IMG/VR virus record: IMGVR_UViG_3300028840_001395
Coordinates: 310,001-374,000 of that record
Strand: one strand, 5' to 3'
DNA length: 64,000 bases
Positions 1,415 to 64,000 of the stretch are shown here, one piece after another. Each line of letters begins with the position of its first letter. The first letter of the stretch is position 1. Below the pieces are notes generated by a model. That model did no database searches and had not been told where the DNA came from. It saw nothing but the letters and a program-made list of their open reading frames with translations. Position numbers and translations under genes: made by a program.

Positions 1415-1448
1415 GTCGGCCTCCTCGACCATTCTACCCTATCGAGAG

Positions 1449-1463: not shown

Positions 1464-1496
1464 GCTCGGGTATCAGTGAGACTTGAGGAGAGGGCA

Positions 1497-27009: not shown

Positions 27010-27839
27010 CGTCCTTCTCCTCGAATCTTGAGCTTCCGGCGAGGAAACTCCCAGTCGGGAATCTCGGTCGAGTAGATGCTCTCGATGGCCTTCCAGAGCA
27101 CCGTGCTCTGGCTGATGATGAACACGTCCTCTCCCGTGGCTTCCTTGAAATCCTGGATCTTCTGGGCCAGTCCCGAAGGCAGGAACCCAGCCCGCTGCTG
27201 CCAGCCCACCACCTCAACCCATCCCACGGGAGCCAGGTCATAGAGGGACTGAAGCAATCGGAACGAAGGCACCCACGAAAGCCCGAAGATGGTCGGTCGA
27301 TACTCGTAGGGCACCCGCTCCCGAAGAAGCACCCGAGCGAAGTTCGCCTCCATGATCGACCGGCACGGATGCGGGATGCCCTTCCTGCGCCCGGCCTTCT
27401 TCCGACCCCCGTGGGGCCGTGGTCCGCTACCACTGCGGGGCAAGATGGCTTCGGAGAACTTCGACACCCGCTGACCGAGCCGTCCCAGGCTGATCGCCCG
27501 GCGATGGTCATCCGAGAGCTTCTTGCCCTTCCACGGGGCCGACTTCTTCAGCCGCTTCGACTGGGCCTCACGCTCATCGACCGAAGCCCAGCGACGCTTC
27601 GCGGCTGCCGACTGCTTGGCCCGGCACTCATCCGAGCGACGACGGCTGGCAGGCATGTCAAGGGCGGCTCCGGGGAACATAGCCAGATAGTTCGCCGGGG
27701 TCATGTCGTGAGCGGTTCGCAGATGACGCCCCAACTGCCGTCTCATCGCCCCACAGATACGACATTCGACCGCAAAGAGGCCGTTATCCTCCCTGGTCTG
27801 GGCCACAGCCCCTCCATTCTGGGCGACAGTGGCCAGCAT
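27006..27839 (-). CDS. Homing-endonuclease-like protein (zinc finger, NUMOD3-like motif, degenerate PD-(D/E)xK domain)
   Basis: CRICG..LGRHLRTAH, KGKKLSDDHRRAIS and RSIMEANFARVL..YEYRP..WVPSF..WVEVVG. Confidence 0.65.
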   Translation of the reverse strand: MLATVAQNGGAVAQTREDNGLFAVECRICGAMRRQLGRHLRTAHDMTPANYLAMFPGAALDMPASRRRSDECRAKQSAAAKRRWASVDEREAQSKRLKKSAPWKGKKLSDDHRRAISLGRLGQRVSKFSEAILPRSGSGPRPHGGRKKAGRRKGIPHPCRSIMEANFARVLLRERVPYEYRPTIFGLSWVPSFRLLQSLYDLAPVGWVEVVGWQQRAGFLPSGLAQKIQDFKEATGEDVFIISQSTVLWKAIESIYSTEIPDWEFPRRKLKIRGEGR

Positions 27840-37294: not shown

Positions 37295-37309
37295 ATACCC
37301 TTACTACCG
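37295..37309 (-). promoter_or_regulatory. Candidate late promoter CGGT-N7-GTAT (cggtagtaagggtat)
   Basis: Lies 40 nt upstream of ATG 37254 and overlaps the upstream stop codon. Confidence 0.45.
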
Positions 37310-43443: not shown

Positions 43444-44334
43444 TCAGCCTCCCAAAGGATCTCTGATTTCAGAGGGTTCGTCCTCAAAGGTGAAGTTCAG
43501 GAAGGCCACACGGGGAGCCGCCTTGTAGGCCTGGACTGTCCCGTCGCTCCGCATGTCATAGATCTGCTCGTACATGTCCTGCACGAGGTTCTGCACCTGA
43601 AGGTCACGACTGAAGCGGTCTTCGTTGAACTCCCCGACGCCCGTGAGGGCTCCCCCGAACGCAGACACCAGGACTTCATCCACCTCCTTGAGAAGCTGCT
43701 CTCGAAGGTCGCAGAGCTTGATGATGCGCCACTCGATATCCTGCACCCGCTCCTTGATGTCCTGCTTGGCCCAGCGCCGGATCGAGTGCATGTAACGGAC
43801 GATGGTGTTCGAGTCGAAGGCCCCCCGGCTCATCCGGCCACCCATCCGAGCCGGGTAGTAGCGGTCGGTGTTCAGATAGCCCCCCTCGTAGTCCCCGAAG
43901 CCCGAACTGGTGCCCGTCTTGGGCTGCGGGTCGTTGTATTCGACCGACCTGGGAGCCACGACGCCACCGTGGGGGTATCGCTGCATGGACTGGGTGGCAT
44001 TCCCTCTAGCGTCCGCCTCCAAGACCTCTGTGCTGTCCGGATACATGAACGGGGAGATGTCGAGAGGATTGCCCCCCTGGGCGACATAGGCCCGGCAGAG
44101 GCGCTCCAGGGAGGAACCCTTGGTGACCCCGAAACCCACCCGCTGCTCGGTCAGGGTGGTCTGCCCGTCCTCCGTCTTGGATGCGTAGTAGACCGTGATG
44201 AAGCCAATGCGGGAGATCTCGGCCTTGATTGCAGCGATACGGGCTGCCACAGTCCGGCGGTTCCGGAGGAGCCAACTGGAGTAGGCCCGGAAGTATCCGA
44301 CCGGCCAGACTGCGAGTTTCTGGAACGAAGCCAT
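43444..44334 (-). CDS. Hypothetical baseplate-region protein (296 aa)
   Basis: GAGGA RBS, tight packing and GC3-rich codons. Confidence 0.8.
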   Translation of the reverse strand: MASFQKLAVWPVGYFRAYSSWLLRNRRTVAARIAAIKAEISRIGFITVYYASKTEDGQTTLTEQRVGFGVTKGSSLERLCRAYVAQGGNPLDISPFMYPDSTEVLEADARGNATQSMQRYPHGGVVAPRSVEYNDPQPKTGTSSGFGDYEGGYLNTDRYYPARMGGRMSRGAFDSNTIVRYMHSIRRWAKQDIKERVQDIEWRIIKLCDLREQLLKEVDEVLVSAFGGALTGVGEFNEDRFSRDLQVQNLVQDMYEQIYDMRSDGTVQAYKAAPRVAFLNFTFEDEPSEIRDPLGG

Positions 44335-44342
44335 GTGTCCTC

Positions 44343-47297
44343 CTAGAGCACGTCCGGCGGCGGATCCGGCGGCGGTGGTGGCGGAGGCGGCAGTTCCTCG
44401 GCATTGATCGCATCGGAGGGGGTGCTCCCATCCGACAGGGTAGCTCCAGGCTGCGGAGACTCTCCGGGCTCCACTTCGAGAAGGGCCTTGATGATGTCGT
44501 AGGCGAAGGCCGGGCCACCGGGAATGACGATGGCGATACCGGCCCCGAAGGCAAGAGGGCTGTCGCTGGGCTTGTTGTCCGCTGACACGAGATCGGAGAG
44601 CACTCCCGCCGACCCGTCAGAGATGAGCATGAGCGCCGAGCACTGGGGGATCTGGAACATAAAGCCCAGGATGGTCTGGATGAGCGAGTTGATGCGCCGA
44701 ATGAGCTGCTGGATCTCGATGACGCGGGCCTCCACGAACTCGATGTACTTCAGGATGGTGTCCACGATGGACTGGATAGACGCCCGGATCTGCCGCATCC
44801 AGTTGACAATGGCCTCCAGGAAGTCCTCCATCCCCGGCACCGTGTCGAAGAATCGGATGACCTCCCACGCTCCGTCCTCGGGACTCCGGCTCAAAGCCGC
44901 AGCCGCGACGTTCAAAGCCGTGGCTGCCTGGCGGAACAGGAGGCCGTCCTGATACTGGTAGAGCAGGTTGCGGCAGAAGTACATGGCCGCCTGGTCAGAC
45001 GGCGTGTATTGACTGTAGTAGGTATATTGGGACTCGATAGCCCAGCGGTTGATCACGAACACAGGCGAGTCATCCGCCGACCCCTCAAGGAACTCGTTGT
45101 CCCGGTAGTAGAGCATCGCCTCATACTCTGACTCGGGAACAAGGATGCTGCCGTCCTCCTGGATGAACTTCTCGTAGAAGATGCGAAGGCCAGGAGCAGC
45201 CAGGGTCATCAACTCCTGGGCCTGTTCGGGGTCTGCCGTGGACAACAGGTAGAACGAGTCGTCCGGCGGAGTCCGAGGAGCCTCCATGAAGTGCGGCTTG
45301 CGGTCTCGGATCACCGCGTCTCCCAAGTAGAAGAGATCGGTCACCGTTCCTTCTGGCAAGCCCGCACAGAATGGGTTGAGGGCCAGCCCGAAGTCGGGGT
45401 TCGCGCCCTTCCTCTCACCCGACTCGACGGCTTCCCAGAGGGTCATCTGGGCGACCTCCTCGGGGAGTGCCCTCTCCATTCCGGGATGCACTTCCTTGAA
45501 GATATCGCCCCAGGTGATCGTCCGGAGAAGTTCGGTCTGCTCGACAATGGCCTTCTCGACGCCGGGCATCGGCCCCGAAGTCGAGAAGAAGTCATTGATC
45601 GTCCGCTCGATGCGCCTCCGCAGGTCGCTCCTGAAGGAGAGAGGAACGCCGTCCTTCTGCTGTCGCTCCTTGGCGTAGTCGTCGTAGAGGAATCCCAGGA
45701 GGTGCTTCAGGGTCTCCAGGCCACCGGGTTGCAGGGCCACACCTTCGAGAACGAGCTTGTCATCGATGATGAGACCAAGTTCCTCCGGGGTGAGCGTGTC
45801 CTCGATCTCCGCCACCGTGGTCAGGTCTGGCCGGGTGAGGGCCAGAATCAGGAGTGCCGACCGCAGCGATTGCATGTAGGCCAGCGTGTTGGCGTTCGGG
45901 AAGGTGATTTCCCGTGGAATCGAGAACTCGCCCACGTCCGACACACCGACTGTTGCATCGGTGAGTCCGACCGAGAGCGGGATGCTGGTGGCGTCCTTCT
46001 TCCCGGCAGCGGTGGGGAAGTCGAACTTGTACTCCTTCTCCCCGCTGGAGATGGCGTTGGTGCAGGTGGCGACCCGGACATAGACCGTGGTGGCATGGCC
46101 GTCCGCGTTCACGACCATCTTGTTGTCCTCGATGGTGATGTCCGCTTCGAGGGGCATGTTCTCCAGATTGAGGACGATGGAGTACTCCTCGGTGACCCAC
46201 TGGGAGCCTGCTACCGTCATGGGCACGAAGTGGGTCGCCTGGAAGACCGGCTTCCCTCCCTGGGTGAGTTCTTCCAGAGGGATGACCGCATCCTTGGCCG
46301 GGTTCTGGAGCCCGTAGACACGGGTAACACCGTTCTTGATATTGCCGTCACTGTCGATGGAGTCGTTGTACGCCATGCTGGGGGCGGTCTTGAGCATCTC
46401 CGCCCCACCGAACAGAATCAAGGGCTTCCCGTCGAAGGCCCTCCGCACCACGTCATACTGATGCGGCTGAACCTTCTTCTCGGGGTCCGCCACGCTCGGT
46501 TGCAACTCGGTGTTCGCCACCGTCCGGTCATAGACGATGGGGATACCGTCCGGGAACGTCGAGAGAGTGACCAGGAAACCGCCCGGCATGTAGAGGTCAG
46601 TGAAGGGCAGGAACGGATCCTTCCTGCCTGGCGGGGTGATCTTCCACTTGATCTCGACCAGATTGGGCGGAGTCCTCTCGGTCCCGGCATCCCCGTCACC
46701 GTCGAGGTAGGGGGCCAGGAAGTAGGAGGCCAGCGTCTTGGGGTAGAAGATGCTCGTGGCGCTCATGTCGTAGCGGATGTCCGTGATGAAGGGGACAGGG
46801 AGCCCGCTGGTGGGCCGGAAGGTCATCTGGAAGTAGGCCATCAGCTTGAGGATGAAGTCGATCAGCCGCTCGATCTCCGATACGTCCACCGACAGGTAGA
46901 AGAAGAAGCTGAGCACCTTGGTTCGGGCCGACACGTCAGGCCGGGTCGGATCCGTCCGGTCGGTGAGCCGGGCGATCATGCGGCGCTCGTACTCGGAGAA
47001 GCCACCCCGGAGCAGGTCGAAGGGGTAGCCGGGGTTCATGATGAGCCCCCAGTCCCCGGTGACGTAGAAGCCCAGCTTCCGCAGATCTTCGAGCAACGCC
47101 TCCAACTCATCAATCACGGCCTGGACAATGGCCAGGATAGGATTGAGGTAGCCCGTCAAGAAGGACTTGGCCAGATCCATCGCCGCCAGCACCAGATCCA
47201 AGACGGAGACGAGGAACTCCGCGATGTCGTTGATTCCCTCCCGGAGATCCTTGAGGAAATCCGGAATCTGGAAGGATACTGTTCCCCACTCTGACAT
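44343..47297 (-). CDS. Hypothetical baseplate-region protein with amphipathic helical termini (984 aa)
   Basis: TGATG coupling, long amphipathic helices at both ends and a poly-Pro tail. Confidence 0.8.
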   Translation of the reverse strand: MSEWGTVSFQIPDFLKDLREGINDIAEFLVSVLDLVLAAMDLAKSFLTGYLNPILAIVQAVIDELEALLEDLRKLGFYVTGDWGLIMNPGYPFDLLRGGFSEYERRMIARLTDRTDPTRPDVSARTKVLSFFFYLSVDVSEIERLIDFILKLMAYFQMTFRPTSGLPVPFITDIRYDMSATSIFYPKTLASYFLAPYLDGDGDAGTERTPPNLVEIKWKITPPGRKDPFLPFTDLYMPGGFLVTLSTFPDGIPIVYDRTVANTELQPSVADPEKKVQPHQYDVVRRAFDGKPLILFGGAEMLKTAPSMAYNDSIDSDGNIKNGVTRVYGLQNPAKDAVIPLEELTQGGKPVFQATHFVPMTVAGSQWVTEEYSIVLNLENMPLEADITIEDNKMVVNADGHATTVYVRVATCTNAISSGEKEYKFDFPTAAGKKDATSIPLSVGLTDATVGVSDVGEFSIPREITFPNANTLAYMQSLRSALLILALTRPDLTTVAEIEDTLTPEELGLIIDDKLVLEGVALQPGGLETLKHLLGFLYDDYAKERQQKDGVPLSFRSDLRRRIERTINDFFSTSGPMPGVEKAIVEQTELLRTITWGDIFKEVHPGMERALPEEVAQMTLWEAVESGERKGANPDFGLALNPFCAGLPEGTVTDLFYLGDAVIRDRKPHFMEAPRTPPDDSFYLLSTADPEQAQELMTLAAPGLRIFYEKFIQEDGSILVPESEYEAMLYYRDNEFLEGSADDSPVFVINRWAIESQYTYYSQYTPSDQAAMYFCRNLLYQYQDGLLFRQAATALNVAAAALSRSPEDGAWEVIRFFDTVPGMEDFLEAIVNWMRQIRASIQSIVDTILKYIEFVEARVIEIQQLIRRINSLIQTILGFMFQIPQCSALMLISDGSAGVLSDLVSADNKPSDSPLAFGAGIAIVIPGGPAFAYDIIKALLEVEPGESPQPGATLSDGSTPSDAINAEELPPPPPPPPDPPPDVL

Positions 47298-47530
47298 CAG
47301 CGCCCTCCGCCGAACTGCAGCCGATTCAACTGCTCACGGAGCTGAAGGATCGTCTTTCGGTCATCCTCCACCGCACCTTCCAAGAGGGTCTTCAGCTTCT
47401 CCAACGCCACTTTCTGACGGTCAACCATCGGCAGCCGGACGGTACGCTCGGGGGAATCGCCCCACTGGCCTGGGTCGAGGCCTAGCTTCTTCAGAAGCTC
47501 CTGGATCTCCTTCAGGTCAGACTCATTCAT
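47297..47530 (-). CDS. Small coiled-coil protein (77 aa)
   Basis: ATGA and TGATG couplings on the two sides. Confidence 0.75.
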   Translation of the reverse strand: MNESDLKEIQELLKKLGLDPGQWGDSPERTVRLPMVDRQKVALEKLKTLLEGAVEDDRKTILQLREQLNRLQFGGGR

Positions 47531-50500
47531 TCGCCAATTCCCTCAATCGAGTCTTCAAGGAGGAGCAGACGCTTCTGCTCCTCCAGGCGCTCGGGAAGTT
47601 CCTCATCAAACCGCACGATGGACGCCAGAGTGCCCAGCTTCACATGGGTACGGTAGGCCAGCCACACGAAGCGGATGGGCCGGAAGCGGTCTCGGGTGTC
47701 GAGCACCTCGTCCACCCGCTCGGGCAGCACGGGGCGCACCACCCCTCCTGTAGAGAAATCGGTATAGGCCGTGTAGGCAGTATCACCGGGGCTGATCCTG
47801 ACCATCTTCAGCGTCGGGTCAGCGGGGTCGGGCTTCAGGAAGTCAAGCCGCCAGTCCTGAATCCAGAATCGACGGTCGAGCAAGGACAGGCAGCTCTCGT
47901 TGTTGATGTAGGGCACCACGTCCAGGCGTCCCAGGATGGACGTGATGTAGTCGTTGGACAGCAGACCCAGACCGGCCTGTGGGTTGGTCGTGTTGCCCAG
48001 GTCGCTGATGTGCTCATCCCGCTGGAAGATGAAGTAGCTGCCGCTCTTGTAGCCCGAGATCACCGCCCGGATCATCTCAATCCACGAGAGCATCCTCTCC
48101 CTGGTCGAGAGCACCAGGTCGATAGTCTCGTCTGTGAACAGCCCGGAAGCCCGGATGACCCGGTAGCCGAAGGGCCGGATGGAGTAGTACTGAAGGTGGT
48201 TTGTCGGGTAGTTCGAGAACGTCCCGTTCGCCGCCCGCTCGTAGGTCGGGCGTAGATCCATCTGGCCCTCGTCCGCGTCCTGTCCGAAGTAGTCCCGAAG
48301 CTGCGAATCATGGATGGTCGGATACACGGCGTACTCGTAGGCATCTGTCGGGGGTGTCCCGAAGATCACGTCATTGTCCACGTCACCCGTGAATGTCGTC
48401 ACCGGGTCCACTTCCAGGTAGGGCGGGTTGCTCGCATCCGCCAGACTGGTGACCCGATAGAAGCCCCGGTTGTCATCCAGGTCGTCAGGAGTCCCCGCCG
48501 TGTAGATGTTATTGGGGGGCGGGGGGCCAGGACGACTGGCCACACCGTCATCTCCGATAGGCCGGGCTCCCTGCTCCTGAGTCGAGGGCAGGCCACTCTT
48601 CCTCGGAATCTTGCCCACCGGGTCAACGATCACGATGTCACCCGGCTGGATACCCAAAGCACTGAACGGCTGGTCAGGAGTCGGGGCATGGAGGTCGTCC
48701 ATGAGTCGGTTGGCGACATCTCCCCAGTCCGGTGTCGGGGCACCCTCCATGTCCGGAACATGACCACCGAGTTCGCCTGCCACGTCGCCCCAGGTGGGGA
48801 ACGTGCGATGCACCACTCGGTCGGTGATGAGTTCGAGAAGCTGCTCGTTCGACTGCTCATGTGGGACAGGAGGCCGCCGGAGGTAGATCTCGAACCGCAT
48901 CCCGCCATCCGGGTTGCCACTCTCGGTCATCTCCGCGACCGTGTACTTGGTCAGGCCCGGCGCAGCCAGGAGAATCTCCCGGTCGCTCAAGATGCTTTCG
49001 ATCTGGGCCTCGTCCACCAGGTCACCGAACTCATCGAGCAATCGAAGCTGGTCGCCTGCGTTGACGTTCACATCCTCGTCGTTGAACGGACCGAGGTTCG
49101 TGCCCGTGTAGGTGTAGCCGTCGTTCCAGGGGTCAGCCTGATGCGGGGTGTGGGAGTCGTCCCAGTTCATCACGAAGTCGTTGGCTGTCAGGATTCCGCC
49201 CTGCTTGGCCGTGACCAAGTAGTTCTTGATGCGTCCTCGCCGGATCTCATAGGCATAGCGGAGAGGCTTGAGGTTCGAGTCGGCCTCCTCCTGAATCTCG
49301 TGCCACCTGCGGATACGTCGAACCTCGTAGTTGACCTGCTCGGGCTGATTGAGGAATCCAGGCGTGATGTTGTAGCTCCAGGCGTCCCGCATCCCCACCT
49401 GACGGTCTTCATCAACAAGGGGCTGGGGGTCGGGCAAGCTGTGGGACGTGTCCACCACCTTGGCATCGCTGTTCGCCAGGTCGAGGGTGGGCCGGGGCAC
49501 CGAGGGCTCCAGGAAGATGCCCGCCTGGGCGTAGTGGCCGGGTGCAAAAGGAGGCCCGATGGAGAGTGGAACGCTATCCCGGATCTCCAGGGAGGTGCCC
49601 GGCAAAATGCACTTGAGCTGTGTTCCGTTGAAGCCGTTGAGGTTCCGCCAGCTCGGAGAGGGTGCCGCAGCACCCACGGTCGGAATGGAGTCCAATCGAA
49701 TGGTGTGAACCACGTAGTCATAGACTGGCGCAAGCTCATCGTTCTCGAAGATCCAGGGTGTCGGCGGGTTGTCTGTCTCAATCCCCAGATGAGGCGGCGT
49801 AGGGGCGACCGGGTAGGGGGCGACGTTGAGTTCGATCTCGCTCGGCCCAGCCGAGGCATCCCAGAAAATACCCGTGCCCGCGTTCAAGGCAGGCTGGAAC
49901 GTCACATACTTGAACCCTGCGACGCTTCCCACTCCAGAGGGGTCGTGCCAGCCCACCGTGTTGTTGTCTGGCAGCCCGTAGGACTCGCCGGACACGTTCA
50001 CAGGCAGGAACATCATCCCCGACACCTGGTAGGGCTTGTCTGTGATGAGGGCCTTAAACTCATCGGGCGTCATGCCGGTAACGGTGCCATCCGAATATCG
50101 GACGGCGGTTAGTCCCTCGATGACAAGCCGTTCGCCATCGAGAGAAAGACCCGTGTAATTAGCCATGATCACAGCCCGGCGGCGGGTCTCCAGGTCGCTG
50201 CTGTTGAGGTCATTCACGCTACGGATGATGTACACCCGCTCGCCCGCTATCGCCGGGAGGAAACCCGTGGTCGTGCCTCCTACCGGAGTGCCGCCCCTTG
50301 CGGGAGCCGGGTCAGAAAGGGTCAGGTTCCGGGTGGCCGTATCGAAGTCCACCACGGTCGGGAAGTGAATAGGACACCACCCCGACTCCGAGCCCGCCAA
50401 CGTCACGGGTGCGTCACCACCCGAGTCCTGGGAGATCCGATAGTCCGAGTGGAGCCCGAAGTTATCGGACTCCACGACATGCCGGACAACGTAGGTGCCC

Positions 50501-53500: not shown

Positions 53501-56500
53501 CTGGTCATCACCATGTCGTCCACGTCGTTCTTGATGAGCGGACGCTGCTGTTCCAGAAGGCGTCCCACACGATCAGGGTTGGGGAAGGAGCCCTCCACCA
53601 CCCCGCCGTCGAGGTCTTGCGAGCCCGGCCTGACAATCCAGTCCGTGGTCAGGTAGAACAGCTCGGCTCCAGGGTCGGCCTGATTGAACACCTCTGACCA
53701 GATGTTCCGCCGCGTCAGGTCACCCGAGATGTCGTCCTCGTAGCCCGGAGTCGGGTAGTCCTTCCCCCGACCGACCCAGAATCGGAACTTGCCATCCCGG
53801 TCACCGATGAAGCCACCGGAGATGGTCTCGTTGATCTGCTCGAAGGACACGATGGATGAGTTGTAGAAGTCGAGGAACGCCCGTGCCGCCCGATCCTGAT
53901 CCTCCAGGGCACTGCGCTCCGACTTGAGCCCGATGCGACCCTGCTCCCAGTTCTCCTGGCCAGGGCCAGAGGTCAGGATGGCCCCGCCAGCGGGCTCCTG
54001 GCTCCGGATGTCCTCGATAGCATCCTGGGCCGCTTCGACCAGGAACTCCGGCATCGAGACCGCCCGGTAGTAGAAGCTGTCCGGGTTGCGGAAGGTGAAC
54101 GTCCCTGTGAGCTGAGCGTTGAGGAAGCCGTTGTCGTCGCTCGGGGCGATGTTGTAGAGGTAGCTCGCCGCATAGCGCGGGAAAGACACCGTGCCGCCGT
54201 CCCAGAAGGGCTGAAGCACCCGGAGCCGGGTGAAGGTGAAAACGAGCTTCTGGGTGGGCTCCAGGGGCTCCTGGAGGGGTTCCAGGAGCGTGATGGCACC
54301 CGTGTCCGGGTCGAGGGTGTATTCGACCCCCTCGATGAGCGTCCGGCCCGGCAGTTCGTTGCCTGCGGTGTCCGTCTCCCCGTAGAGGATCAACTCGTAG
54401 GGTTCATCGATGACCAGCGGCCCAACACCATTGAACTCGAAGCTCTGTGGAGCGTAGATGGGCCGGTAGGTCAACTTGATGGTCGTGGCTTCCTCGACCG
54501 AGTAGCCCGTCTTGAACTGGTTGGTGACGGTGATCTTGGTTCGGGTGCCGTCATCGGTCAACTCGGCCTGGCCGATGGTGTGAGGCTCCCCGCCCACCTC
54601 GATGATGTGCCCCGGCTGGGCGAACGCCAGGAGGTTGCCGAGGAAGATGACCTCCATCTGTCCCCGGTTGATAGGCTCGAATGGGAAGTCCGTGAGGTCG
54701 ATGGCCGACATGAGCCCCGCAGCGGCACTGGTCGGGATAGGGCTCGACCCATCCGGGTCGATGACAGACGTGATCGGCAGGTTGGACACCGCGCTGATCG
54801 AGTCGTTGCCCGGTGACCGACTACCGACTTCCGTGACAGTCGAGGGGAAGATATTGACCGCCGTGACATCCCCGGTGCCTTCGTCATTCTGGGGGTAGTA
54901 CTTGGTGCTCTCGATGTAGAATGTCTCGTTGTCCACCCGGAGAATCTGCCCCGGCTGGAACTCATCGGCTCGGTCTCCTCGAAGGCCGAAGCGGGACTGG
55001 CCCGCCTCGATGAAGAACGGGGGCCGATAGAGAGGCTTGGTGCTCGCGTCATAGGCCCGCTCGCCCCCGATGGCTTCAAGGACAGCGTAGGACACCTGGA
55101 CGGTCACATGGTCAGGGATTTCCCTGGTGAATGAGAGCCTTCCCTGACCGTTGAGGTAATCCGGGTAGTCGAGGATGTAGTCCAGGGCGTTGTAGTTCTG
55201 CATCACCGCGCCGATGTACACGAGGGGCTCGATGCGCTGATCGATGGTGCGCCGAGGATCGACGTTGAAGTAGAACACGCTGGGGGACACAGCATCTTCG
55301 TCCCGAACCGCCTCCTCGTCCTGGATGTACACCGGAAGGAACTCGGTGATCTGGTCGCCAACCTTGCGACCTTCCAGGTCAGCCGCCCAGTAGGACACCT
55401 CCACGGTCGAGTTCTCGGACACGGGCTGGTTGAAGGCGAACGACCCCAGAAGCGGGTTGATAGCCACGTCCTCCCGCTCCTCGGTGATCATGCGCTCCAC
55501 GAAGTAGGCCGTCGTGGAACCCCCGAAGGTACTGATCTCGGTCGCGGAGAAGTTGAGCCGACCGTTCGTGGGGTCATACTCAACCGTCAGAGCGGCCAGA
55601 TCCGCCGGAGGCTGGAACGCCTGGGCATAGTGAACCACCGAGGACTCGTAGTTGACCAGGAGGTTCGAGCCGAACTTGAGCCGACCGATGGGGTTCACCA
55701 CACCATCGATGGTCGCCTCCTGGGTCAGATACTCAATGCCGTCACCACCACCCGGATTCGAGCTGAAAGTCGTCACACCCTTGAGGAGCACACCATCATT
55801 CTCGAATACCGTGGTGCCGATCTTGATGGAGAAGGAGCCCGTCGTGAACCGCTGCGAGTCCGTCTCCGGCACATCCAGGGCGTTGTTCGCCAGGGTGCCA
55901 AGCTCCGTCTGAGTCAGAGCGATCATCGAAGCCGTGTTCGCCGCCGTGGCTGCCACAAGCCCGAAGCGGATACCGATGGGCCGGTTGCTCGCCAGGGCCT
56001 TCTCCATGTAGGCGAACAGCCGAGAGTTCTCCTGAGCAGTAGAACTCTCGGGCACCGTACCCACGGGCGACAACAGAAAGACCTCGAAGGGCTCTGATTG
56101 CAGGTGGTTGAACGTCTTGTAGGACATATCAGCCACGATGGACGGGTCGTACACGTCCTCGGTGACGCCCTCATACAGTTCCCAGGTGACCAATCGCTCG
56201 GGTGTCCCGGTCGGTGTGGGAGAGATCCTGATATTCTGGGCGTCCACCACCTCCTGCACGACGTAGGAGCCTGCCACGGGCTCTCCGCCGGACAGCACCT
56301 TGAGCCGGTAACCGGGCTCGGCCTGGGTGAAGTCGGTGTCGGTGGAGTCGTCGGAGAAGGTGTCACTCCCCTCCGTGATGACACCTCGGGCACCCGAAGA
56401 GACCACCGACCCCAGCTTCTCGACCAGAACCGCGATGCCCGGAATCCCGTTCTCGGGAAGCAGGTAGTCGGTGTCCTGTGTCTGGAACTCGGCAGAACCA

Positions 56501-59322
56501 CCACCCTCCGAGACGTACAGACCCCCACCAATCTCGGGCGCACCCAGCATGGACTCTGGCACCACCACCGACTGTTCGAGGTTGATGCTCGCCGCCGGGG
56601 CCTGGAGAGACTCCGAGATGGCGTTGCTCACCACCCAGTCGAACTTGGACTGGCCGAAGCGGTAGATGATGTCGTCGTAGTGGTCGAGATACCTCTGGAC
56701 GATGGTGACCGAGAATCCATCATCCACCGTGGTTGAGAGGCTGAAGAAGATGTTCTCATCGAACCCAGCCACGTCCTGCAACGGCGGGTTGTCGAGGAAC
56801 TGGAACGGGTTGGCCGACACCGCCTCCTGAAGGATCTCCTCGTCCAGCCGGTTGGTGTCCTTGAAGTCCGGGATCGCCCGAGTGCGATCCAGGTTGAGAG
56901 GGCTTCGGAACAGCCCCAGGGACGTTCCACTGTCCGGCAGCCAGTTGGTGAGCCCCCCTCGCGCCTTCCAGCCCGGCATGAAGCCCAGCACGGCTGCCCC
57001 GGAGAGATCCTTCTCCCCTCCCTCTCCCCAGCCGATCTCGACGTTGCCAGTGGCCTCATTGGTGGCTCCCAGAACCACACGACCGTTCATCTCGTAGGCT
57101 GTGCCAGTGATGAGTCCCGTGCCGGGGCCAGGGAGCTGCTCCGAGTCATTGGTGATGCTCTCGGCCACCTCGGTGGCCGTATAGAAGTCAGACCCCGTGA
57201 GGTTGGAGGACTCCCACTTGTAGAGCTGACCGTCGATGGCGAAGTAGAGGATCTCTTCTCCGTCGAAGCGGAACACGTCCCGCGTCTTGGAGAACAACCG
57301 GGCCGTGAGCGTATGAACCGCCGGAGTGAACGAGGACTGAAGGAAGTACACCTTGTCCCCAGACCAGGAACGCAAGTCCGACCGGCTCAAGGACACCCGC
57401 GACGGATAGATGGTGACTGGCCCCGGAAGCGTGAGAGGGGTGTCCTCCTGGGCGATGTAGGCCCGGCCTCGCCGTACCTTGTAGCTCGGGAAAGGCAGGT
57501 CGCTGTTTCGGGGCTCATCATAGACCGTATCGGTCGAGCGTGTCCGCCCGAACACGATGATGTCACCCACGCCATCAGAGATCTGGCGGAGCCGCCCTGT
57601 GGTCACATCACTTTCGTCATCCCCACCAGGTCGAACACTGCCTGGCACTCCAGGCTGGGCCGGGAGGGCTCCTGTGCCATCTGGCGCGTCGATGACGCCA
57701 GAACGGCCCAGTCCTCGGTAGAGGTCGGTGCCCGAGTAGTCATCTGGCAGCGTGACCGCCTCGGGCAAATAGAACGCATCCGAAGTCCCGGCGATGGCGT
57801 CATCACCATCTTCATCGATCAGGGCGACCGGAGCCTTCGTGGGCTGGGGCACCTGATTGAGAGCCGTCCCGTCATAGACGAGATCCTCGCCCAAGAAGTA
57901 CTTGTCGAAGGACGTGATGTTCGTCGGGTCGGCCTTGGCAATGTCCTCTGGGCTGAGCTTCACCCGACCCGTAGAGAGCGCCACGATGGCCTGCCCCGTG
58001 GACGGGTTGGGGAGGGCCGCCAGTTCGGCCTCCGTGTCGGTCATGGTGATGCTCAGATACTTCCGGCTCCCCAGTCGGAGGAGAGGGGTGTCGGTCGGCC
58101 CAGGGACAGGGGCGATGAACAGCGGGCGGATATCAGCCCCGTTGAGCTTCCCGACGATTCCGTCCTCTTCCTCGGAGAAGCTCTTGTAGACGAACCAGAC
58201 CGTCTTGCCTGCATGGAGCTGAACGTAGGACGGGTTGAACTCCAGCTTGCCCGTGGTCTGGCCCATGACACCGGCCAGACCTGGGTCGGTGCTGAAGTCG
58301 AATCCATCCTCGACCTGACTGTCCGACTTGACCTGGATGCCGGTATAGCCGTCCGGGTCTCCTGTACCGACCGGGGTGCTCGATGCTCCGGGATTCGGAC
58401 CCAACCTGATCATTGCATAGGCGTCCGGGTCATTTCCGTCACCCGGCAGGAACGCATTGACCGGCAGGTTGGTGATCTTCGGGGACATCTGGTAGCTCTC
58501 GTCAAAGAGCAGAATCCCGAGATCCTTTGGTGCCGACCCCTTGATGGGAGCCCACCGCTGCTGCTGGCCGTTCCAGGCGAAGCGGGTCTCGTAACGGTCG
58601 TTCCTCGTCCAGTAGAACCTGACCGGCGACAGGGTGTAGGTCACGCTGATGATCTGGTCACCTCGTTCGGCGGACAGACCCCCACCCAGTTCATCGAGGA
58701 TCTGCTGACCGTCCCAGGGCGGGAGGGCCTCCAGAGTATCCCGAGTCAACCTGACGATCCCTGCCTGAGTGTCCTGGTCTTGCTCGGTCAGAACCACCGT
58801 GATGTAGGGGCGGAAGCCGTTGCGGCCCTGTGTCGGGTCTTCGGAGTCACGCCACCCGAGATCGAAGTAACGCACGTCGCCACGGGCGATGACGATGGTG
58901 GTGATGATTCCGATACTCCGGCCACCATTATCAGTGACCACCGCCCGGTCGGTCCCATCCTCATAGGGATTGGGTTCATCGTCGTCGGGATCCGCGTTCT
59001 CCACTTCGAGGGTGCCGTTGGGGATAGACCCGGAACCTTCCTCCACCCACCAGTCGGGGTTGTCCACCATCGCCAGGCTGCCAGTATTCTGCGCCCAGAC
59101 GAGATACTCGGCAGCGGTTGTTCCGGGGGCATCCAGGACGGAAGCCCTGTACTGGTCAGCGTAGGCATCCACGAACGCGGGCGCGTCGGCCTGGCTGTCA
59201 TATTCGGAAGGCACCGGCTTGGGGCATCGGGTGACCCCCGTGGTCGGTTCCGCCGTGGACTGGGCGTTGGCCGGAGAGACCCTCGGCCCGCGCAGTACGT
59301 ATCCCTCGAACTTGTCAGCCAT
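47527..59322 (-). CDS. Giant virion baseplate/tail-associated protein (3931 aa)
   Basis: An 11.8-kb uninterrupted ORF with acidic, beta-rich composition and TAATG coupling, lying between the spike and the gp25-like gene. Confidence 0.8.
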   Translation of the reverse strand: MADKFEGYVLRGPRVSPANAQSTAEPTTGVTRCPKPVPSEYDSQADAPAFVDAYADQYRASVLDAPGTTAAEYLVWAQNTGSLAMVDNPDWWVEEGSGSIPNGTLEVENADPDDDEPNPYEDGTDRAVVTDNGGRSIGIITTIVIARGDVRYFDLGWRDSEDPTQGRNGFRPYITVVLTEQDQDTQAGIVRLTRDTLEALPPWDGQQILDELGGGLSAERGDQIISVTYTLSPVRFYWTRNDRYETRFAWNGQQQRWAPIKGSAPKDLGILLFDESYQMSPKITNLPVNAFLPGDGNDPDAYAMIRLGPNPGASSTPVGTGDPDGYTGIQVKSDSQVEDGFDFSTDPGLAGVMGQTTGKLEFNPSYVQLHAGKTVWFVYKSFSEEEDGIVGKLNGADIRPLFIAPVPGPTDTPLLRLGSRKYLSITMTDTEAELAALPNPSTGQAIVALSTGRVKLSPEDIAKADPTNITSFDKYFLGEDLVYDGTALNQVPQPTKAPVALIDEDGDDAIAGTSDAFYLPEAVTLPDDYSGTDLYRGLGRSGVIDAPDGTGALPAQPGVPGSVRPGGDDESDVTTGRLRQISDGVGDIIVFGRTRSTDTVYDEPRNSDLPFPSYKVRRGRAYIAQEDTPLTLPGPVTIYPSRVSLSRSDLRSWSGDKVYFLQSSFTPAVHTLTARLFSKTRDVFRFDGEEILYFAIDGQLYKWESSNLTGSDFYTATEVAESITNDSEQLPGPGTGLITGTAYEMNGRVVLGATNEATGNVEIGWGEGGEKDLSGAAVLGFMPGWKARGGLTNWLPDSGTSLGLFRSPLNLDRTRAIPDFKDTNRLDEEILQEAVSANPFQFLDNPPLQDVAGFDENIFFSLSTTVDDGFSVTIVQRYLDHYDDIIYRFGQSKFDWVVSNAISESLQAPAASINLEQSVVVPESMLGAPEIGGGLYVSEGGGSAEFQTQDTDYLLPENGIPGIAVLVEKLGSVVSSGARGVITEGSDTFSDDSTDTDFTQAEPGYRLKVLSGGEPVAGSYVVQEVVDAQNIRISPTPTGTPERLVTWELYEGVTEDVYDPSIVADMSYKTFNHLQSEPFEVFLLSPVGTVPESSTAQENSRLFAYMEKALASNRPIGIRFGLVAATAANTASMIALTQTELGTLANNALDVPETDSQRFTTGSFSIKIGTTVFENDGVLLKGVTTFSSNPGGGDGIEYLTQEATIDGVVNPIGRLKFGSNLLVNYESSVVHYAQAFQPPADLAALTVEYDPTNGRLNFSATEISTFGGSTTAYFVERMITEEREDVAINPLLGSFAFNQPVSENSTVEVSYWAADLEGRKVGDQITEFLPVYIQDEEAVRDEDAVSPSVFYFNVDPRRTIDQRIEPLVYIGAVMQNYNALDYILDYPDYLNGQGRLSFTREIPDHVTVQVSYAVLEAIGGERAYDASTKPLYRPPFFIEAGQSRFGLRGDRADEFQPGQILRVDNETFYIESTKYYPQNDEGTGDVTAVNIFPSTVTEVGSRSPGNDSISAVSNLPITSVIDPDGSSPIPTSAAAGLMSAIDLTDFPFEPINRGQMEVIFLGNLLAFAQPGHIIEVGGEPHTIGQAELTDDGTRTKITVTNQFKTGYSVEEATTIKLTYRPIYAPQSFEFNGVGPLVIDEPYELILYGETDTAGNELPGRTLIEGVEYTLDPDTGAITLLEPLQEPLEPTQKLVFTFTRLRVLQPFWDGGTVSFPRYAASYLYNIAPSDDNGFLNAQLTGTFTFRNPDSFYYRAVSMPEFLVEAAQDAIEDIRSQEPAGGAILTSGPGQENWEQGRIGLKSERSALEDQDRAARAFLDFYNSSIVSFEQINETISGGFIGDRDGKFRFWVGRGKDYPTPGYEDDISGDLTRRNIWSEVFNQADPGAELFYLTTDWIVRPGSQDLDGGVVEGSFPNPDRVGRLLEQQRPLIKNDVDDMVMTSLARPKLFFKLRYPFFYYKVKGRFRTLYQRSRFSRIFPTETRAFFMSYPGVGGNQETEDPDAWSAGRYTYGAIFFGDKKRTTGKTIGQLWNPALGDIDRRVSNVKLSRRRARARIWGYFPNGIPDFSFQGGTEPGGADPSITEPCLIAVPALLRDIPIDPGTGFPDDSQLISQGFGLSNSEAWLPDAVAGDPELVVPGFERGDEVSLGKPDGTTYDAFWNRKILANPFDPTWTFLGLQVYDISYGCVIRFQSPQGLGVVPPKAPITNPNDILVGTGTDVGIPFADFPVETHDTIFAGPPLKSLDAPIAGGTSNAATQDDIIELAQGLDDYRTGYDVRVTGSGRVVDKTWPSFYDPSLFGIKEIFGQHPPDPLSYLEADVRFYYDGLNPFQFPALRGEVVDDSGDYQIPYIKAANTELDRFDEAMIGISPVMTEVDDLGGYIYPDEILGTDGAVLGPAQPPGFATPASLLTDEDAEPRLHGITEPGIGDIKRYDLLLIQAAEASASKFEVSGGPATTVGPMGIQSIGEIDTLTPPPAGSKFEPPRFITQTTPPPPGGVPVTPSPVSYIFTNAMSYADGAPADSGPPASPGVQIIEDQANNITRLDFSSLGQFALNDGFTPVPVYGPSPGGTPTGNLNRIWSLIGPKSNNIITIKLISRLDPAILNGPLGGNPLPSVSGGVVALTIQIQGGSITLTDYQGNIYGPFALIPGFDVAFGTKWPVPVNGPPAEAVLDNKEIIIPQIGMIPWGPGPGTTAEWFLPHTVTAGPTYTMNYGFEFTFDIDTFNAATGESDTAWVDNDRLTFHEVFDLRMAQERGTVYPYSGGPPPPPYTQLQLEAGLVVTLVTMNHPSVGAIQSWVNATANGFTGVIPNPFTFKTRTVGSTPGDWQRKTDLLLDYEQGTIKAMAFEGWNNTEITTSDDVTFSAIPSDERFSGGRICRGAGGMASQYNPDIIAGPYDPLLVDNRVIISVAPTNGLLENIESGDILVVESNPGGNHLASTKAGTYVVRHVVESDNFGLHSDYRISQDSGGDAPVTLAGSESGWCPIHFPTVVDFDTATRNLTLSDPAPARGGTPVGGTTTGFLPAIAGERVYIIRSVNDLNSSDLETRRRAVIMANYTGLSLDGERLVIEGLTAVRYSDGTVTGMTPDEFKALITDKPYQVSGMMFLPVNVSGESYGLPDNNTVGWHDPSGVGSVAGFKYVTFQPALNAGTGIFWDASAGPSEIELNVAPYPVAPTPPHLGIETDNPPTPWIFENDELAPVYDYVVHTIRLDSIPTVGAAAPSPSWRNLNGFNGTQLKCILPGTSLEIRDSVPLSIGPPFAPGHYAQAGIFLEPSVPRPTLDLANSDAKVVDTSHSLPDPQPLVDEDRQVGMRDAWSYNITPGFLNQPEQVNYEVRRIRRWHEIQEEADSNLKPLRYAYEIRRGRIKNYLVTAKQGGILTANDFVMNWDDSHTPHQADPWNDGYTYTGTNLGPFNDEDVNVNAGDQLRLLDEFGDLVDEAQIESILSDREILLAAPGLTKYTVAEMTESGNPDGGMRFEIYLRRPPVPHEQSNEQLLELITDRVVHRTFPTWGDVAGELGGHVPDMEGAPTPDWGDVANRLMDDLHAPTPDQPFSALGIQPGDIVIVDPVGKIPRKSGLPSTQEQGARPIGDDGVASRPGPPPPNNIYTAGTPDDLDDNRGFYRVTSLADASNPPYLEVDPVTTFTGDVDNDVIFGTPPTDAYEYAVYPTIHDSQLRDYFGQDADEGQMDLRPTYERAANGTFSNYPTNHLQYYSIRPFGYRVIRASGLFTDETIDLVLSTRERMLSWIEMIRAVISGYKSGSYFIFQRDEHISDLGNTTNPQAGLGLLSNDYITSILGRLDVVPYINNESCLSLLDRRFWIQDWRLDFLKPDPADPTLKMVRISPGDTAYTAYTDFSTGGVVRPVLPERVDEVLDTRDRFRPIRFVWLAYRTHVKLGTLASIVRFDEELPERLEEQKRLLLLEDSIEGIGE

Positions 59323-59936
59323 TACACCACCTGCGAACTCGTCGCCCCAGCACCCGGAATAGTCGGAACAATAGGCCCACCCTGAATCGACCCCGCACCT
59401 GTCCCCTGAAGTAGCTGGCTCGCAATACCGCTCCCCAAAGCTCGGGCCATCATGGGCAGAGCAGGCCCCGACGAAGCAGGGGCCGCTGCTGCAATCGTCC
59501 CCATCAGGATCTTGGTCAATGTCCCACCATTGGCTGTCGTGATCTTGGACACGTCAGCCCCCACCGCTACGCTGGCGGACGGCCCCGTGTAGTTCCCTGA
59601 CCCGCTGAAGGCCTGGGCGATAGCCACAGCCGTCACCGTCGCCAGGCTGGTTCCCAGCGGGCCATTCAATCCAGCGCCCTTGAACTCAGCCAGCACGATC
59701 CCCACGTTGGCAGGCACCGCGAGCTTGGACAGCAAGGGCACGATGGTTCCTGTACCGGCGAGACCCGAGGCTCCCCCTGTCAGTCCCAGATTGGCCTGGT
59801 TTCCCACACCCCACTGGGCCACTCCGTTGGCAATCCCGATGGCGAGCTTGTCATACTGGCTCCCCAGAAACGGGTAGGGAGCGGCTGCCCTCGCCGCCTG
59901 AAATGCCTGGAGAATGGTGCCCGCGTTCAAAGCCAT
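59322..59936 (-). CDS. Gly/Ala-rich protein next to the spike (204 aa)
   Basis: Internal repeats LAIGIANGV / LATVTAVAIA / MARALGSGIA. It occupies the position directly after the spike gene. Confidence 0.7.
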   Translation of the reverse strand: MALNAGTILQAFQAARAAAPYPFLGSQYDKLAIGIANGVAQWGVGNQANLGLTGGASGLAGTGTIVPLLSKLAVPANVGIVLAEFKGAGLNGPLGTSLATVTAVAIAQAFSGSGNYTGPSASVAVGADVSKITTANGGTLTKILMGTIAAAAPASSGPALPMMARALGSGIASQLLQGTGAGSIQGGPIVPTIPGAGATSSQVV

Positions 59937-63998: not shown

Positions 63999-64000
63999 GA

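What the first reader, a model, noticed from the sequence alone, without database searches (positions are those of the whole stretch)
43444..59936. About 16.5 kb of unassignable virion genes, including a 3931-aa giant, between the spike and gp25-J-I wedge genes
Seen: five tightly packed genes (204, 3931, 77, 984 and 296 aa) separate the gp5/VgrG-like spike from the gp25/J/I-like trio, and I see no PAAR gene. The gp25-like (392 aa) and J-like (1173 aa) proteins are themselves much enlarged. Known: in P2, Mu and eCIS loci the spike and wedge genes are usually adjacent or nearly so. Inference: this lineage builds a greatly elaborated baseplate with a large extra scaffold or tail-tip apparatus, possibly a type not yet described structurally.
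Basis: partly seen in the sequence, partly recalled or inferred. Interest (0 to 1): 0.7.

Follow-up and report, generated by a model that had tools for sequence, protein, structure and literature searches.

The report
Giant conserved baseplate module, huge phage
A 435-kb uncultured phage, like at least 200 relatives, carries five conserved genes between its tail spike and baseplate-wedge genes; one is a 3,931-residue globular protein of unknown fold and another is probably a new kind of spike-tip cap, so this lineage likely builds a much enlarged, undescribed tail tip or baseplate.

Summary
Five co-directional, translationally coupled genes (204, 3931, 77, 984 and 296 aa) lie between a gpV/gp5-type spike and a gp25/J/I wedge trio. 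The window comes from a complete 435,804-bp phage genome with terminal repeats.

None of the five matches Pfam, PHROGs, PDB sequences or T4 baseplate and neck proteins. They are not an oddity of this genome. The giant has 56 full-length homologues and at least 222 IMG/VR loci, and the order hub-spike-204-giant-77-984-296-gp25-J is kept in essentially every locus fetched.

- **p204:** it has three internal repeats, almost no charged residues and no PAAR motif. A complex model places one copy on the tip of the spike trimer (ipSAE 0.72, best control 0.00), with one repeat per spike chain. It probably fills the missing PAAR role.
- **Giant:** its C-terminal 1,200 residues fold as a compact multidomain body (pLDDT 89.6, pTM 0.83), so it is neither a fibre nor a tape measure. 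No whole-fold match exists. It shares a small beta-barrel module with the I-like wedge protein, and its weak structural neighbours are phage tail and baseplate proteins.
- **Sub-modules:** in a rearranged relative the block splits into giant-77-984 with p204 nearby, 296-gp25-J, and the spike elsewhere.

Best reading: an added baseplate or tail-tip structural module. Virion location is inferred, not shown.

The parts
62388..64000 (-). 3' part of a 1783-aa gene (genome 372388-377739) that runs off the window. It is a hub or tail-lysin candidate directly upstream of the spike.
   Evidence: One search gives the gene model. One search shows an SSHPDGAAID motif of the SxHxxGxAxD type (LAS/M15 peptidase-like; the assignment rests on my reading of the motif) and a coiled coil. 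It has no Pfam or PHROG hit. Its length varies between 1280 and 2137 aa across relatives.
59950..62388 (-). Central spike (812 aa) of gpV/gp5/VgrG type.
   Evidence: DUF2345 hit at E 2e-4, below the cut-off. Of 44 orthologues, 6 hit DUF2345 and 3 hit Phage_base_V. The consensus carries a gpV-like OB-fold motif. The C-terminal 223 residues model as a trimer with pLDDT 88-89.
59322..59936 (-). p204: an Ala/Gly-rich, nearly uncharged protein of three internal repeats. It is the predicted monomeric spike-tip cap, a PAAR-like role without PAAR sequence.
   Evidence: Composition. Three repeats (1-73, 74-135, 136-204) by hhalign self-comparison, probability 85%, E 6e-6. Complex model with 3 x spike 590-812: ipSAE 0.72, best control 0.00, partner pLDDT 90, contact agreement between runs at least 93%; contacts are spike 789-801 of all three chains with p204 21-31, 89-98 and 152-163. 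The contact loops centre on G25, G92 and G157, conserved in 37-43 of 43 sequences; the spike contact loop is more conserved (0.63) than its surroundings (0.47). No PAAR Pfam hit in any of 43 members.
47527..59322 (-). Giant protein (3931 aa, P0001): mostly beta, globular and multidomain. Residues 1-2400 and 3350-3931 are conserved; 2400-3350 is indel-rich.
   Evidence: No Pfam, PHROG or PDB sequence hit. Family of 56 full-length homologues, conserved along its whole length. AF2 of residues 2732-3931: pLDDT 89.6, pTM 0.83. No whole-fold match; only an EF-Tu-domain-II-like barrel at giant residues about 3358-3491, Z about 7, also seen in lambda gpJ. The module at about 970-1040 is homologous to I461 (E 1e-7) and d1800 (E 2e-6).
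47297..47530 (-). p77: a small, charged, helix-prone protein translationally coupled to both neighbours. It is a candidate assembly chaperone or adaptor.
   Evidence: Composition is 60% helix formers. ATGA and TGATG overlaps with its neighbours. It is conserved between the giant and p984 in 47 of 48 loci, and also in the rearranged LR745208.1.
44343..47297 (-). p984: N- and C-terminal long helices pack together, with an inserted FN3-like beta-sandwich and an all-helical domain. The overall fold is unknown.
   Evidence: AF2 pLDDT 81, pTM 0.63. Foldseek on PDB finds nothing at E<=0.001. VIA finds only an FN3-like match at Z about 8 for residues 165-468. AFDB gives uncharacterised proteins, best E 1e-6. 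It always follows giant-p77.
43444..44334 (-). p296: a wedge-associated protein with an N-terminal helix and a conserved C-terminal coiled-coil-like segment.
   Evidence: No family or PDB hit. It stays directly upstream of gp25-J even in LR745208.1, where the giant lies elsewhere. It is adjacent to the gp25-like gene in 48 of 48 loci.
42212..43390 (-). gp25-like sheath initiator, enlarged to 392 aa.
   Evidence: Sheath_initiator E 2.8e-4, below the cut-off. Baseplate PHROGs 2669, 975 and 43.
38689..42210 (-). Baseplate J / gp6-like wedge protein (1173 aa).
   Evidence: PF04865 E 1e-23. phrog_6 E 3.5e-29. 39.6% identical to the LR745208.1 orthologue.
37304..38689 (-). I-position wedge protein (461 aa) carrying repeats of the same small barrel module as the giant.
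   Evidence: Position directly after J. Giant-chunk HMMs hit it with whole-sequence E 8e-7 to 9e-8, with stretches at residues 262-304 and 346-398 among others. It is fused to the 1800-aa downstream protein in LR745208.1.

Best explanation
The 16.5 kb is a conserved late-operon insertion that adds structural parts to the centre or underside of a contractile-tail baseplate in an uncultured clade of huge phages. It has three functional pieces.

1. **p204.** This is a monomer of three repeats that caps the blunt tip of the trimeric spike, one repeat per spike chain. It does the job PAAR or gp5.4 does elsewhere, but with an uncharged Ala/Gly-rich surface.
2. **Giant-p77-p984.** This is a separable three-gene unit. 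It makes a very large globular multidomain protein of about 430 kDa. That protein is built partly from the small beta-barrel and beta-sandwich modules used in wedge and tail-tip proteins. A 77-aa helical helper and a 984-aa partner go with it. Together they form an extra baseplate or tail-tip layer, with the indel-rich part of the giant (residues 2400-3350) exposed.
3. **p296.** This protein belongs to the gp25-J-I wedge block.

**Shown:** the gene structure, the conservation and synteny, the lack of known homologues, the three repeats in p204, the compact predicted fold, and the module shared with the I-like protein.

**Predicted:** the p204-spike contact.

**Inferred:** virion location, copy number, and where the giant docks.
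For: - **Operon position.** The genes sit in a co-directional operon between spike and wedge genes, with overlapping stop and start codons.
- **Conserved order.** Each neighbouring gene pair from u238 to J is adjacent in 25/25 to 57/58 of the fetched loci where both genes were found. The order also holds in ENA and NCBI contigs at 32-45% identity.
- **Length behaviour.** Giant length is tightly kept (median 3731 aa, CV 0.08), whereas the upstream 1783-aa gene varies more (CV 0.13).
- **Fold.** The C-terminal third of the giant gives pLDDT 89.6 and pTM 0.83, which means a compact body.
- **Shared module.** A giant module is homologous to modules in the I-like wedge protein and the 1800-aa tail protein.
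- **Structural neighbours.** The weak neighbours are almost exclusively tail fibre, baseplate J, gp7-type 'wedge initiator' and host-specificity-J proteins.
- **p204.** Three repeats. Cap model ipSAE 0.72 against 0.00 for the controls; this mark was reached by 58 of 80 solved complexes and 2 of 110 mismatched pairs; partner pLDDT 90; runs agree on at least 93% of contacts. The interface residues are conserved.
- **Sub-modules.** They are revealed by the rearranged relative LR745208.1.
Against: - There is no proteomic, imaging or expression evidence that any of the five proteins is in the virion.
- All structural similarities of the giant and of p984 fall below the level that shows homology (TM <0.3, Z <8).
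- Only 1,200 of the giant's 3,931 residues were folded.
- The cap model is a prediction made with my own alignments and with three copies plus one partner, which the tool's calibration does not cover.
- The spike assignment itself rests on sub-threshold hits.
- In LR745208.1 the p204 gene is far from the spike gene. So gene linkage does not itself support a p204-spike pairing.
Confidence: 0.55

Rival explanations
1. The giant is cargo or a tip-mounted apparatus carried on the spike through the p204 cap. This would resemble T6SS VgrG-PAAR-Rhs effectors, and the giant would be released or delivered at penetration rather than being a fixed baseplate layer.
For: - The gene order spike, cap, giant carries a TAATG coupling.
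- In LR745208.1 p204 travels with the giant, about 3 kb away, and not with the spike.
- The cap is predicted to sit on the spike tip.
- The body is compact and globular.
Against: - No toxin, enzyme or Rhs/YD signature appears in any of the giants tested.
- Sequence is conserved along the whole length, with no swapped C-terminal modules. This is unlike polymorphic effectors.
- A module is shared with wedge and tail proteins.
- All top 150 p204 relatives are stand-alone proteins of 120-253 aa. None is fused to an extension as PAAR often is.
- No giant-p204 contact was tested.
Confidence: 0.17
2. The giant is a peripheral receptor-binding or host-adhesion structure, in effect a very large tail-fibre or tailspike substitute. 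The 2400-3350 region binds the host surface, and p77 acts as a fibre-assembly chaperone.
For: - Residues 2400-3350 are indel-rich and the least conserved.
- A small gene lies directly downstream, as with fibre chaperones.
- The nearest BFVD and AFDB neighbours include 'tail fiber' and 'host specificity protein J' proteins.
Against: - The folded third is compact with a confident interdomain arrangement (pTM 0.83). It is not an elongated trimeric fibre.
- The variable region stays homologous across the family and is not exchanged.
- Several other very large tail genes lie downstream of the wedge (1067, 1800, 1199, 1084 and 2117 aa), where fibres are normally encoded.
- No lectin, CBM or depolymerase fold was found.
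Confidence: 0.15
3. The giant is the tape measure protein or another tail-lumen protein, and the module is only an unusual arrangement of standard tail genes.
For: - It lies close to the spike and hub genes.
- It is very long.
Against: - Its composition is beta-type: 32% helix formers and 18% Gly+Pro. Propensity analysis calls it mostly strand.
- The AF2 model is a compact beta-rich body.
- Its length is nearly constant across the clade. Meanwhile a 1008-aa gene with 55% helix formers, and the length-variable 1783-aa gene, lie upstream in the usual tape-measure position.
Confidence: 0.03
4. The five genes are not virion components. They would be assembly factors, scaffolds removed before maturation, or late non-structural proteins that happen to sit in the tail operon.
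For: - There is no direct virion evidence.
- T4 has non-virion assembly catalysts (gp26/gp51, gp57A) inside its tail gene clusters, as annotated.
- p77 in particular looks like a helper protein.
Against: - An 11.8-kb gene kept at constant length and conserved along its whole length in over 200 loci is costly for a catalyst.
- It shares a module with wedge proteins.
- p204 is predicted to bind the spike tip, which is a virion location.
Confidence: 0.1

Closest known systems
PAAR-repeat spike-tip proteins (T4 gp5.4, T6SS PAAR; Pfam PF05488)
   Same: - It is a small stand-alone protein encoded just downstream of the spike gene.
- It has three pseudo-repeats.
- One copy is predicted to sit on the three-fold tip of the spike beta-helix, each repeat touching one chain.
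- T4 gp5.4 is likewise a separately encoded tip protein (PMC12407873).
   Different: - No PAAR motif or Pfam hit occurs in the genome or in any of 43 family members.
- It is about twice as long (about 195 aa; T4 gene 5.4 is 294 bp).
- It is Ala/Gly-rich with almost no charged residues and no Cys.
- The repeats contain a predicted helix-forming 'LAxAI' segment.
- No fusion to extension domains appears among the top 150 relatives.
P2 / Mu / eCIS-type minimal baseplate operon (spike V - gp25 W - J - I)
   Same: The order spike, then gp25-like, J-like and I-position genes is kept on one strand.
   Different: - Five genes (16.5 kb) are inserted between spike and gp25.
- The gp25-like (392 aa) and J-like (1173 aa) proteins are enlarged.
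- The I-position protein carries barrel repeats that it shares with the giant.
Large multi-layer baseplates of jumbo phages (phiKZ, Goslar) and the T4 peripheral wedge proteins gp7-gp10
   Same: Very large phages add inner and peripheral baseplate layers made of many extra proteins. The Goslar baseplate is about 100 nm across, with hub/spike, inner and peripheral parts (bioRxiv 10.64898/2026.04.21.720040). The weak BFVD neighbours of the giant include cyanophage gp7-type 'baseplate wedge initiator' proteins.
   Different: - There is no sequence or profile similarity to T4 gp6-gp14.
- No PDB chain from any solved baseplate matches above noise.
- Here the extra mass is concentrated in one polypeptide of about 430 kDa.
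Lambda gpJ / TipJ central tail-tip proteins
   Same: One small beta-barrel of the giant (residues about 3358-3491) superposes on the barrel at gpJ residues 490-567 (Z 6.6-6.9). TipJ and host-specificity-J clusters are among the nearest atlas shapes.
   Different: - The match covers one domain of about 80 residues, of a fold also found in EF-Tu domain II and many enzymes.
- TM is <0.2 overall.
- gpJ belongs to non-contractile tails.

Membership tests
PAAR (PF05488), tested for p204 | PAAR sequence motifs or a Pfam match | tested here: not met
   No PAAR match in the whole genome at E<=1. None of 43 p204-family members hits PAAR at E<=0.1.
PAAR (PF05488), tested for p204 | Three pseudo-repeats giving pseudo-three-fold symmetry | tested here: met
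   hhalign self-comparison finds repeats 1-73, 74-135 and 136-204 (probability 83-85%, E 6e-6 to 9e-6).
PAAR (PF05488), tested for p204 | One copy binds the tip of the trimeric spike beta-helix | tested here: inconclusive
   Prediction only: ipSAE 0.72 against a best control of 0.00, with contacts to all three chains through one loop per repeat. The interface is conserved. No experiment has been done.
gpV / gp5 / VgrG spike, tested for the 812-aa protein | N-terminal OB-fold (Phage_base_V) and C-terminal beta-helix (DUF2345-type) | tested here: inconclusive
   DUF2345 gives 21.5 bits against a cut-off of 30.7. Of 44 orthologues, 6 hit DUF2345 and 3 hit Phage_base_V, all sub-threshold. A gpV-like motif is present in the consensus. 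The profile search against PDB sequences found nothing.
T4 peripheral and inner baseplate subunits gp6-gp12, gp53, and neck proteins gp13/gp14 | Profile-to-sequence similarity of the giant, p984, p296 or p204 to the T4 proteins | tested here: not met
   The best hhalign probability is 4.3%. The templates were single sequences, so very remote homology cannot be excluded.
Tape measure protein, tested for the giant | Predominantly alpha-helical extended protein whose length varies with tail length | tested here: not met
   32% helix formers and mostly strand propensity. Compact beta-rich model. Length CV 0.08.
Rhs/YD or other polymorphic spike-borne effectors, tested for the giant | Rhs/YD repeats or a recognisable toxin domain, with variable C-terminal modules | tested here: not met
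   No Pfam family in the 3931-aa protein at E<=1. None in the 4164-aa variant at E<=0.01, and only one sub-threshold Gp18_dom_I hit (E 0.003, 17.9 bits against a cut-off of 27) in the 4941-aa variant. The C-terminus is the conserved part.
Baseplate_J (gp6/gpJ), tested for the 1173-aa protein | Pfam PF04865 match above the cut-off | tested here: met
   84.3 bits against a cut-off of 21.1. Confirmed on the genome.
gp25 / Sheath_initiator, tested for the 392-aa protein | Pfam PF10934 match above the cut-off | tested here: inconclusive
   21.4 bits against a cut-off of 32.9. Three baseplate PHROGs at E 7e-4 to 5e-3. The position directly upstream of J is conserved.

The most novel reading that the evidence does not exclude
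The spike of this huge-phage clade ends in a non-PAAR, three-repeat hydrophobic cap. That cap anchors one to three copies of a 430-kDa globular protein, together with p984, at the very tip of the tail. This would be a tail-tip organelle with no described counterpart in contractile tails. It would act either as a host-envelope docking or penetration device or as a delivered cargo.
Probability: 0.15. Interest if true: 0.85.

Novelty: new variant of a known kind. Interest (0 to 1): 0.62.

Why it matters
Contractile-tail baseplates are thought to share a small conserved core, with lineage-specific additions at the periphery. Here an abundant but uncultured clade of 200-600-kb phages keeps about 5,500 codons of unknown protein between the spike and the wedge core. 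The clade has at least 222 IMG/VR loci, and this phage's own DNA turns up in sediment and seawater metagenomes.

If p204 is a spike-tip protein, PAAR is not the only solution for capping a CIS spike. Searches for 'PAAR-less' phages, eCIS and T6SS would then have a new family to look for.

The giant family is a convenient marker gene for the clade. It is also a defined target for cryo-EM or cryo-ET of environmental virions and for domain-wise structure prediction.

Tried and rejected
- **Family scans.** Pfam and PHROGs scans of all operon genes, including seven upstream genes, recognised only Baseplate_J, a weak gp25 and a weak DUF2345.
- **Sheath.** Sheath Pfam models found nothing in the genome.
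- **PDB by sequence.** phmmer and hmmsearch of single proteins and of profiles A1-A5 against PDB sequences found nothing meaningful.
- **T4 comparison.** hhalign against 25 T4 tail, neck and baseplate proteins found nothing; a first attempt timed out.
- **Atlas feature searches.** For giant 1-2000 and 3330-3931 the scores stayed at noise level, 0.76-0.81. For p296 there was no model and no hit.
- **T4 gp13 / adaptor lead.** The atlas shape hit had TM 0.28 and the atlas features scored 0.78. I could not confirm it. PF26809 is not in the local Pfam, the hhalign probability against T4 gp13 is <=4.3%, over only 12 aligned columns, and no PDB neck protein appears in the VIA lists. I dropped the lead.
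- **RNA polymerase motif.** A 'DEDGD' string near residue 505 of the giant looked like an RNA-polymerase DxDGD motif, but it is not conserved in the family.
- **Representative search with p204.** It was saturated by the family's own members, so it says nothing about more distant relatives.
- **Longer giant variants.** Pfam on the 4941-aa and 4164-aa variants gave no informative extra domain.
- **GTDB species genomes.** The scan gave only four MAG contigs and no isolate or host clue.
- **Huge-phage paper.** LR745208 was not found in the held supplements of that paper.
- **Promoter and terminator scan.** The counts equal those expected from shuffled sequence.
- **First locus search.** A single-protein scan with p984 found one locus only; the alignment-based scan was needed.
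Full report
**What the window is.** The window is bases 310001-374000 of a 435,804-bp virus record with direct terminal repeats that is estimated complete. The region of the finding lies in a run of about 50 kb of minus-strand genes. Many of these are very large: 2117, 1084, 1199, 1800, 1067, 1173 and 3931 aa. The nearest deposited relative is the 485-kb uncultured phage LR745208.1. Its J protein is 39.6% identical and its giant 31-35% identical. The cultured Tunturiibacter phage Tunturi_5 shares only a 29% identical J-like protein and has no giant. The same DNA is present in three metagenome runs from three studies, from sediment and seawater.

**Checking the observation.** The stop and start codons overlap as TAATG (204/giant), ATGA (giant/77) and TGATG (77/984). 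Downstream, the 1173-aa protein is a clear Baseplate_J (E 1e-23; phrog_6). The 392-aa protein is a sub-threshold gp25/Sheath_initiator with three baseplate PHROG hits. The 461-aa gene is 'I-like' by position only. Upstream, the 812-aa protein is a spike on weaker grounds. It has sub-threshold DUF2345 hits in 6 of 44 orthologues and Phage_base_V hits in 3 of 44. It also has a gpV-type OB-fold motif in the family consensus. No PAAR match exists anywhere in the genome. The five genes have no usable Pfam or PHROG match.

**Is it real and conserved?** The giant has 56 full-length homologues of 3,459-4,052 aa at 30-70% identity in the protein collection, none with a Pfam domain. An alignment of 51 of them is conserved along its whole length. 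Residues 1-2400 and 3350-3931 are the best kept, and 2400-3350 is rich in indels. A scan of IMG/VR with that alignment found 222 loci, of which 79 were fetched, on contigs of up to 619 kb.

In these loci the order is u238-u531-u1783-spike-p204-giant-p77-p984-p296-gp25-J(-I). Each neighbouring pair is adjacent in 25/25 to 57/58 loci where both genes were found (J-I in 5/5). The same order holds on ENA and NCBI contigs. Giant length is nearly fixed (median 3731 aa, CV 0.08, a few variants of 4164 and 4941 aa). The 1783-aa upstream gene ranges from 1280 to 2137 aa. Only four contigs in about 185,000 species genomes carry the giant, and all four are MAG contigs. The family is therefore confined to uncultured phages.

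**Sub-structure of the block.** LR745208.1 is rearranged, and that is informative.
- Giant, a 72-aa gene and an 867-aa p984 homologue stay together.
- A p204 homologue lies 3 kb upstream on the other strand.
- p296 stays directly upstream of gp25-J.
- The spike lies about 230 kb away.
- Two IMG/VR loci (L031, L083) also have the giant away from the spike.

So giant-p77-p984 is one unit, p296 belongs to the wedge block, and p204 tracks the giant at least as much as the spike.

**p204.** It is 19% Ala and 17% Gly, with almost no Asp, Glu, Lys or Arg. Profile self-comparison shows three tandem repeats at residues 1-73, 74-135 and 136-204 (probability 83-85%, E about 6e-6). A monomer with three repeats is what a protein sitting on a three-fold axis would look like, so I tested the cap idea.

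Three copies of spike residues 590-812 plus one p204 gave ipSAE 0.72-0.73 in three runs. The three controls gave 0.00. Partner pLDDT was 90 and the runs agreed on 93-95% of contacts. The tool's mark was reached by 58 of 80 solved complexes and 2 of 110 mismatched pairs, with the caveat that my own alignments and a 3+1 design lie outside its calibration.

The contacts are spike residues 789-801 of all three chains against p204 residues 21-31, 89-98 and 152-163, which is one loop per repeat. Those loops centre on G25, G92 and G157, conserved in 37-43 of 43 sequences. The spike loop L[DE]P[LF]T[GN]LPF is more conserved (0.63) than its surroundings (0.47). No family member has a PAAR hit. The family has 439 representatives at E<=1e-3 among 1.84 billion proteins, and the top 150 are all stand-alone proteins of 120-253 aa. 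I conclude that p204 works like a spike-tip protein but is not a PAAR family member. This is a prediction, not a measurement.

**The giant.** Composition and propensity show it is mostly beta, with weak internal repeats of a module of about 55 residues. AlphaFold2 on residues 2732-3931 with 97 sequences gave pLDDT 89.6 and pTM 0.83. The model is a compact, confidently packed multidomain body ending in about 200 helical residues. It is neither an elongated fibre nor a helical tape measure.

Foldseek against the PDB gave no hit at E<=0.001. VIA-align gave a best Z of 7.2-7.6. The matches cover only a barrel of about 80 residues (giant residues about 3358-3491) of the EF-Tu-domain-II type. That barrel also occurs in lambda gpJ, the JBD30 baseplate and some tailspikes.

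AFDB, BFVD and atlas neighbours are all weak (TM <0.3). They are nevertheless dominated by tail fibre, baseplate J-like, gp7-type wedge initiator and host-specificity-J proteins.

Within the phage itself, HMMs of giant residues about 750-1200 hit the I-position wedge protein (whole-sequence E 8e-7 to 9e-8, several stretches) and the 1800-aa downstream protein (E 1e-5 to 2e-6). The giant is thus built at least partly from the same module as bona fide tail proteins of this phage.

**p984, p77 and p296.**
- **p984.** It models well (pLDDT 81). Long N- and C-terminal helices pack together, with an FN3-like sandwich (residues 165-468) and a helical domain (469-840). It has no significant PDB match. 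Its only AFDB neighbours are uncharacterised proteins.
- **p77.** It is a charged, Leu-rich, helix-prone peptide coupled to both neighbours. The most economical guess is a helper or adaptor, and this is inference.
- **p296.** It has no match anywhere.

**Explanations weighed.**
- **Tape measure.** This reading fails on composition, fold and length behaviour. A helix-rich 1008-aa gene and the variable 1783-aa gene upstream are better tape-measure or hub candidates. The 1783-aa gene also carries an SSHPDGAAID peptidase-like motif.
- **Fibre or adhesin.** This fits the indel-rich region and the downstream small gene. It does not fit the compact fold, or the presence of five more giant genes in the usual fibre position.
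- **T6SS-like cargo or tip-mounted body.** This fits the gene order and the LR745208.1 linkage. It lacks any toxin or enzyme signature and any modular C-terminal variation.
- **Non-virion role.** This cannot be excluded without proteomics. It is unlikely for so large and so uniformly conserved a protein that shares a module with wedge proteins.

I therefore favour an added baseplate or tail-tip structural module with a novel spike cap (confidence about 0.55). The tip-mounted or cargo version is the most interesting alternative that remains open.

**Novelty.** The machine is a known kind, a contractile tail with spike, gp25, J and I. The inserted proteins are new families with no recognisable relatives in Pfam, PHROGs or the PDB. 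One of them probably replaces PAAR. That makes this a new variant of a known kind rather than a new category.

Noticed in passing
window 37304-38689 and 28637-34039; L003:23391-28682: The 461-aa I-position protein and the 1800-aa protein are separate genes here, with a 1067-aa gene between them. In LR745208.1 a single 1763-aa ORF matches both: its residues 26-508 match the 461-aa protein and its residues 526-1637 match the 1800-aa protein.
   Followed up: partly
window 62388-64000, continuing to genome 377739: The 1783-aa gene upstream of the spike contains SSHPDGAAID, a motif of the SxHxxGxAxD LAS/M15-peptidase type, and a long Gln-rich coiled coil. It may be a hub or tail-lysin fusion. It has no Pfam hit.
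   Followed up: partly
window 27006-27839 (-): A 277-aa ORF inside the run of giant tail genes has a near-threshold ROS/MucR zinc-finger match (E 3.5e-5, 24.3 bits against a cut-off of 25.4).
   Followed up: no
genome 85246-120154 (outside the window): aragorn finds 70 tRNA genes in the phage genome, in two large arrays. One of them has a four-base anticodon call (tatc).
   Followed up: no
genome 387943-390720 (L004:15943-18720, -): A 925-aa protein with VIT and von Willebrand A domains lies just upstream of the tail operon.
   Followed up: no
L054, L059, L066 (giant 4941 aa); L065 (4164 aa): A few clade members carry giants 400-1200 residues longer than the family median of 3731 aa. Pfam sees no significant domain in them. 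Where the insertions lie was not mapped.
   Followed up: partly
genome 380058-383084 (L004:8058-11084, -): A 1008-aa protein with 55% helix-forming residues (13% Ala, 10% Lys) lies three genes upstream of the 1783-aa gene. It is the most tape-measure-like protein in the operon.
   Followed up: no
window 1476-5063 (+), 686-1432 (-), 10212-11186 (+): The left part of the window holds non-structural genes: a UvrD-type helicase with an N-terminal extension of about 290 aa, a calcineurin-like phosphoesterase, and a DUF6011 protein.
   Followed up: no
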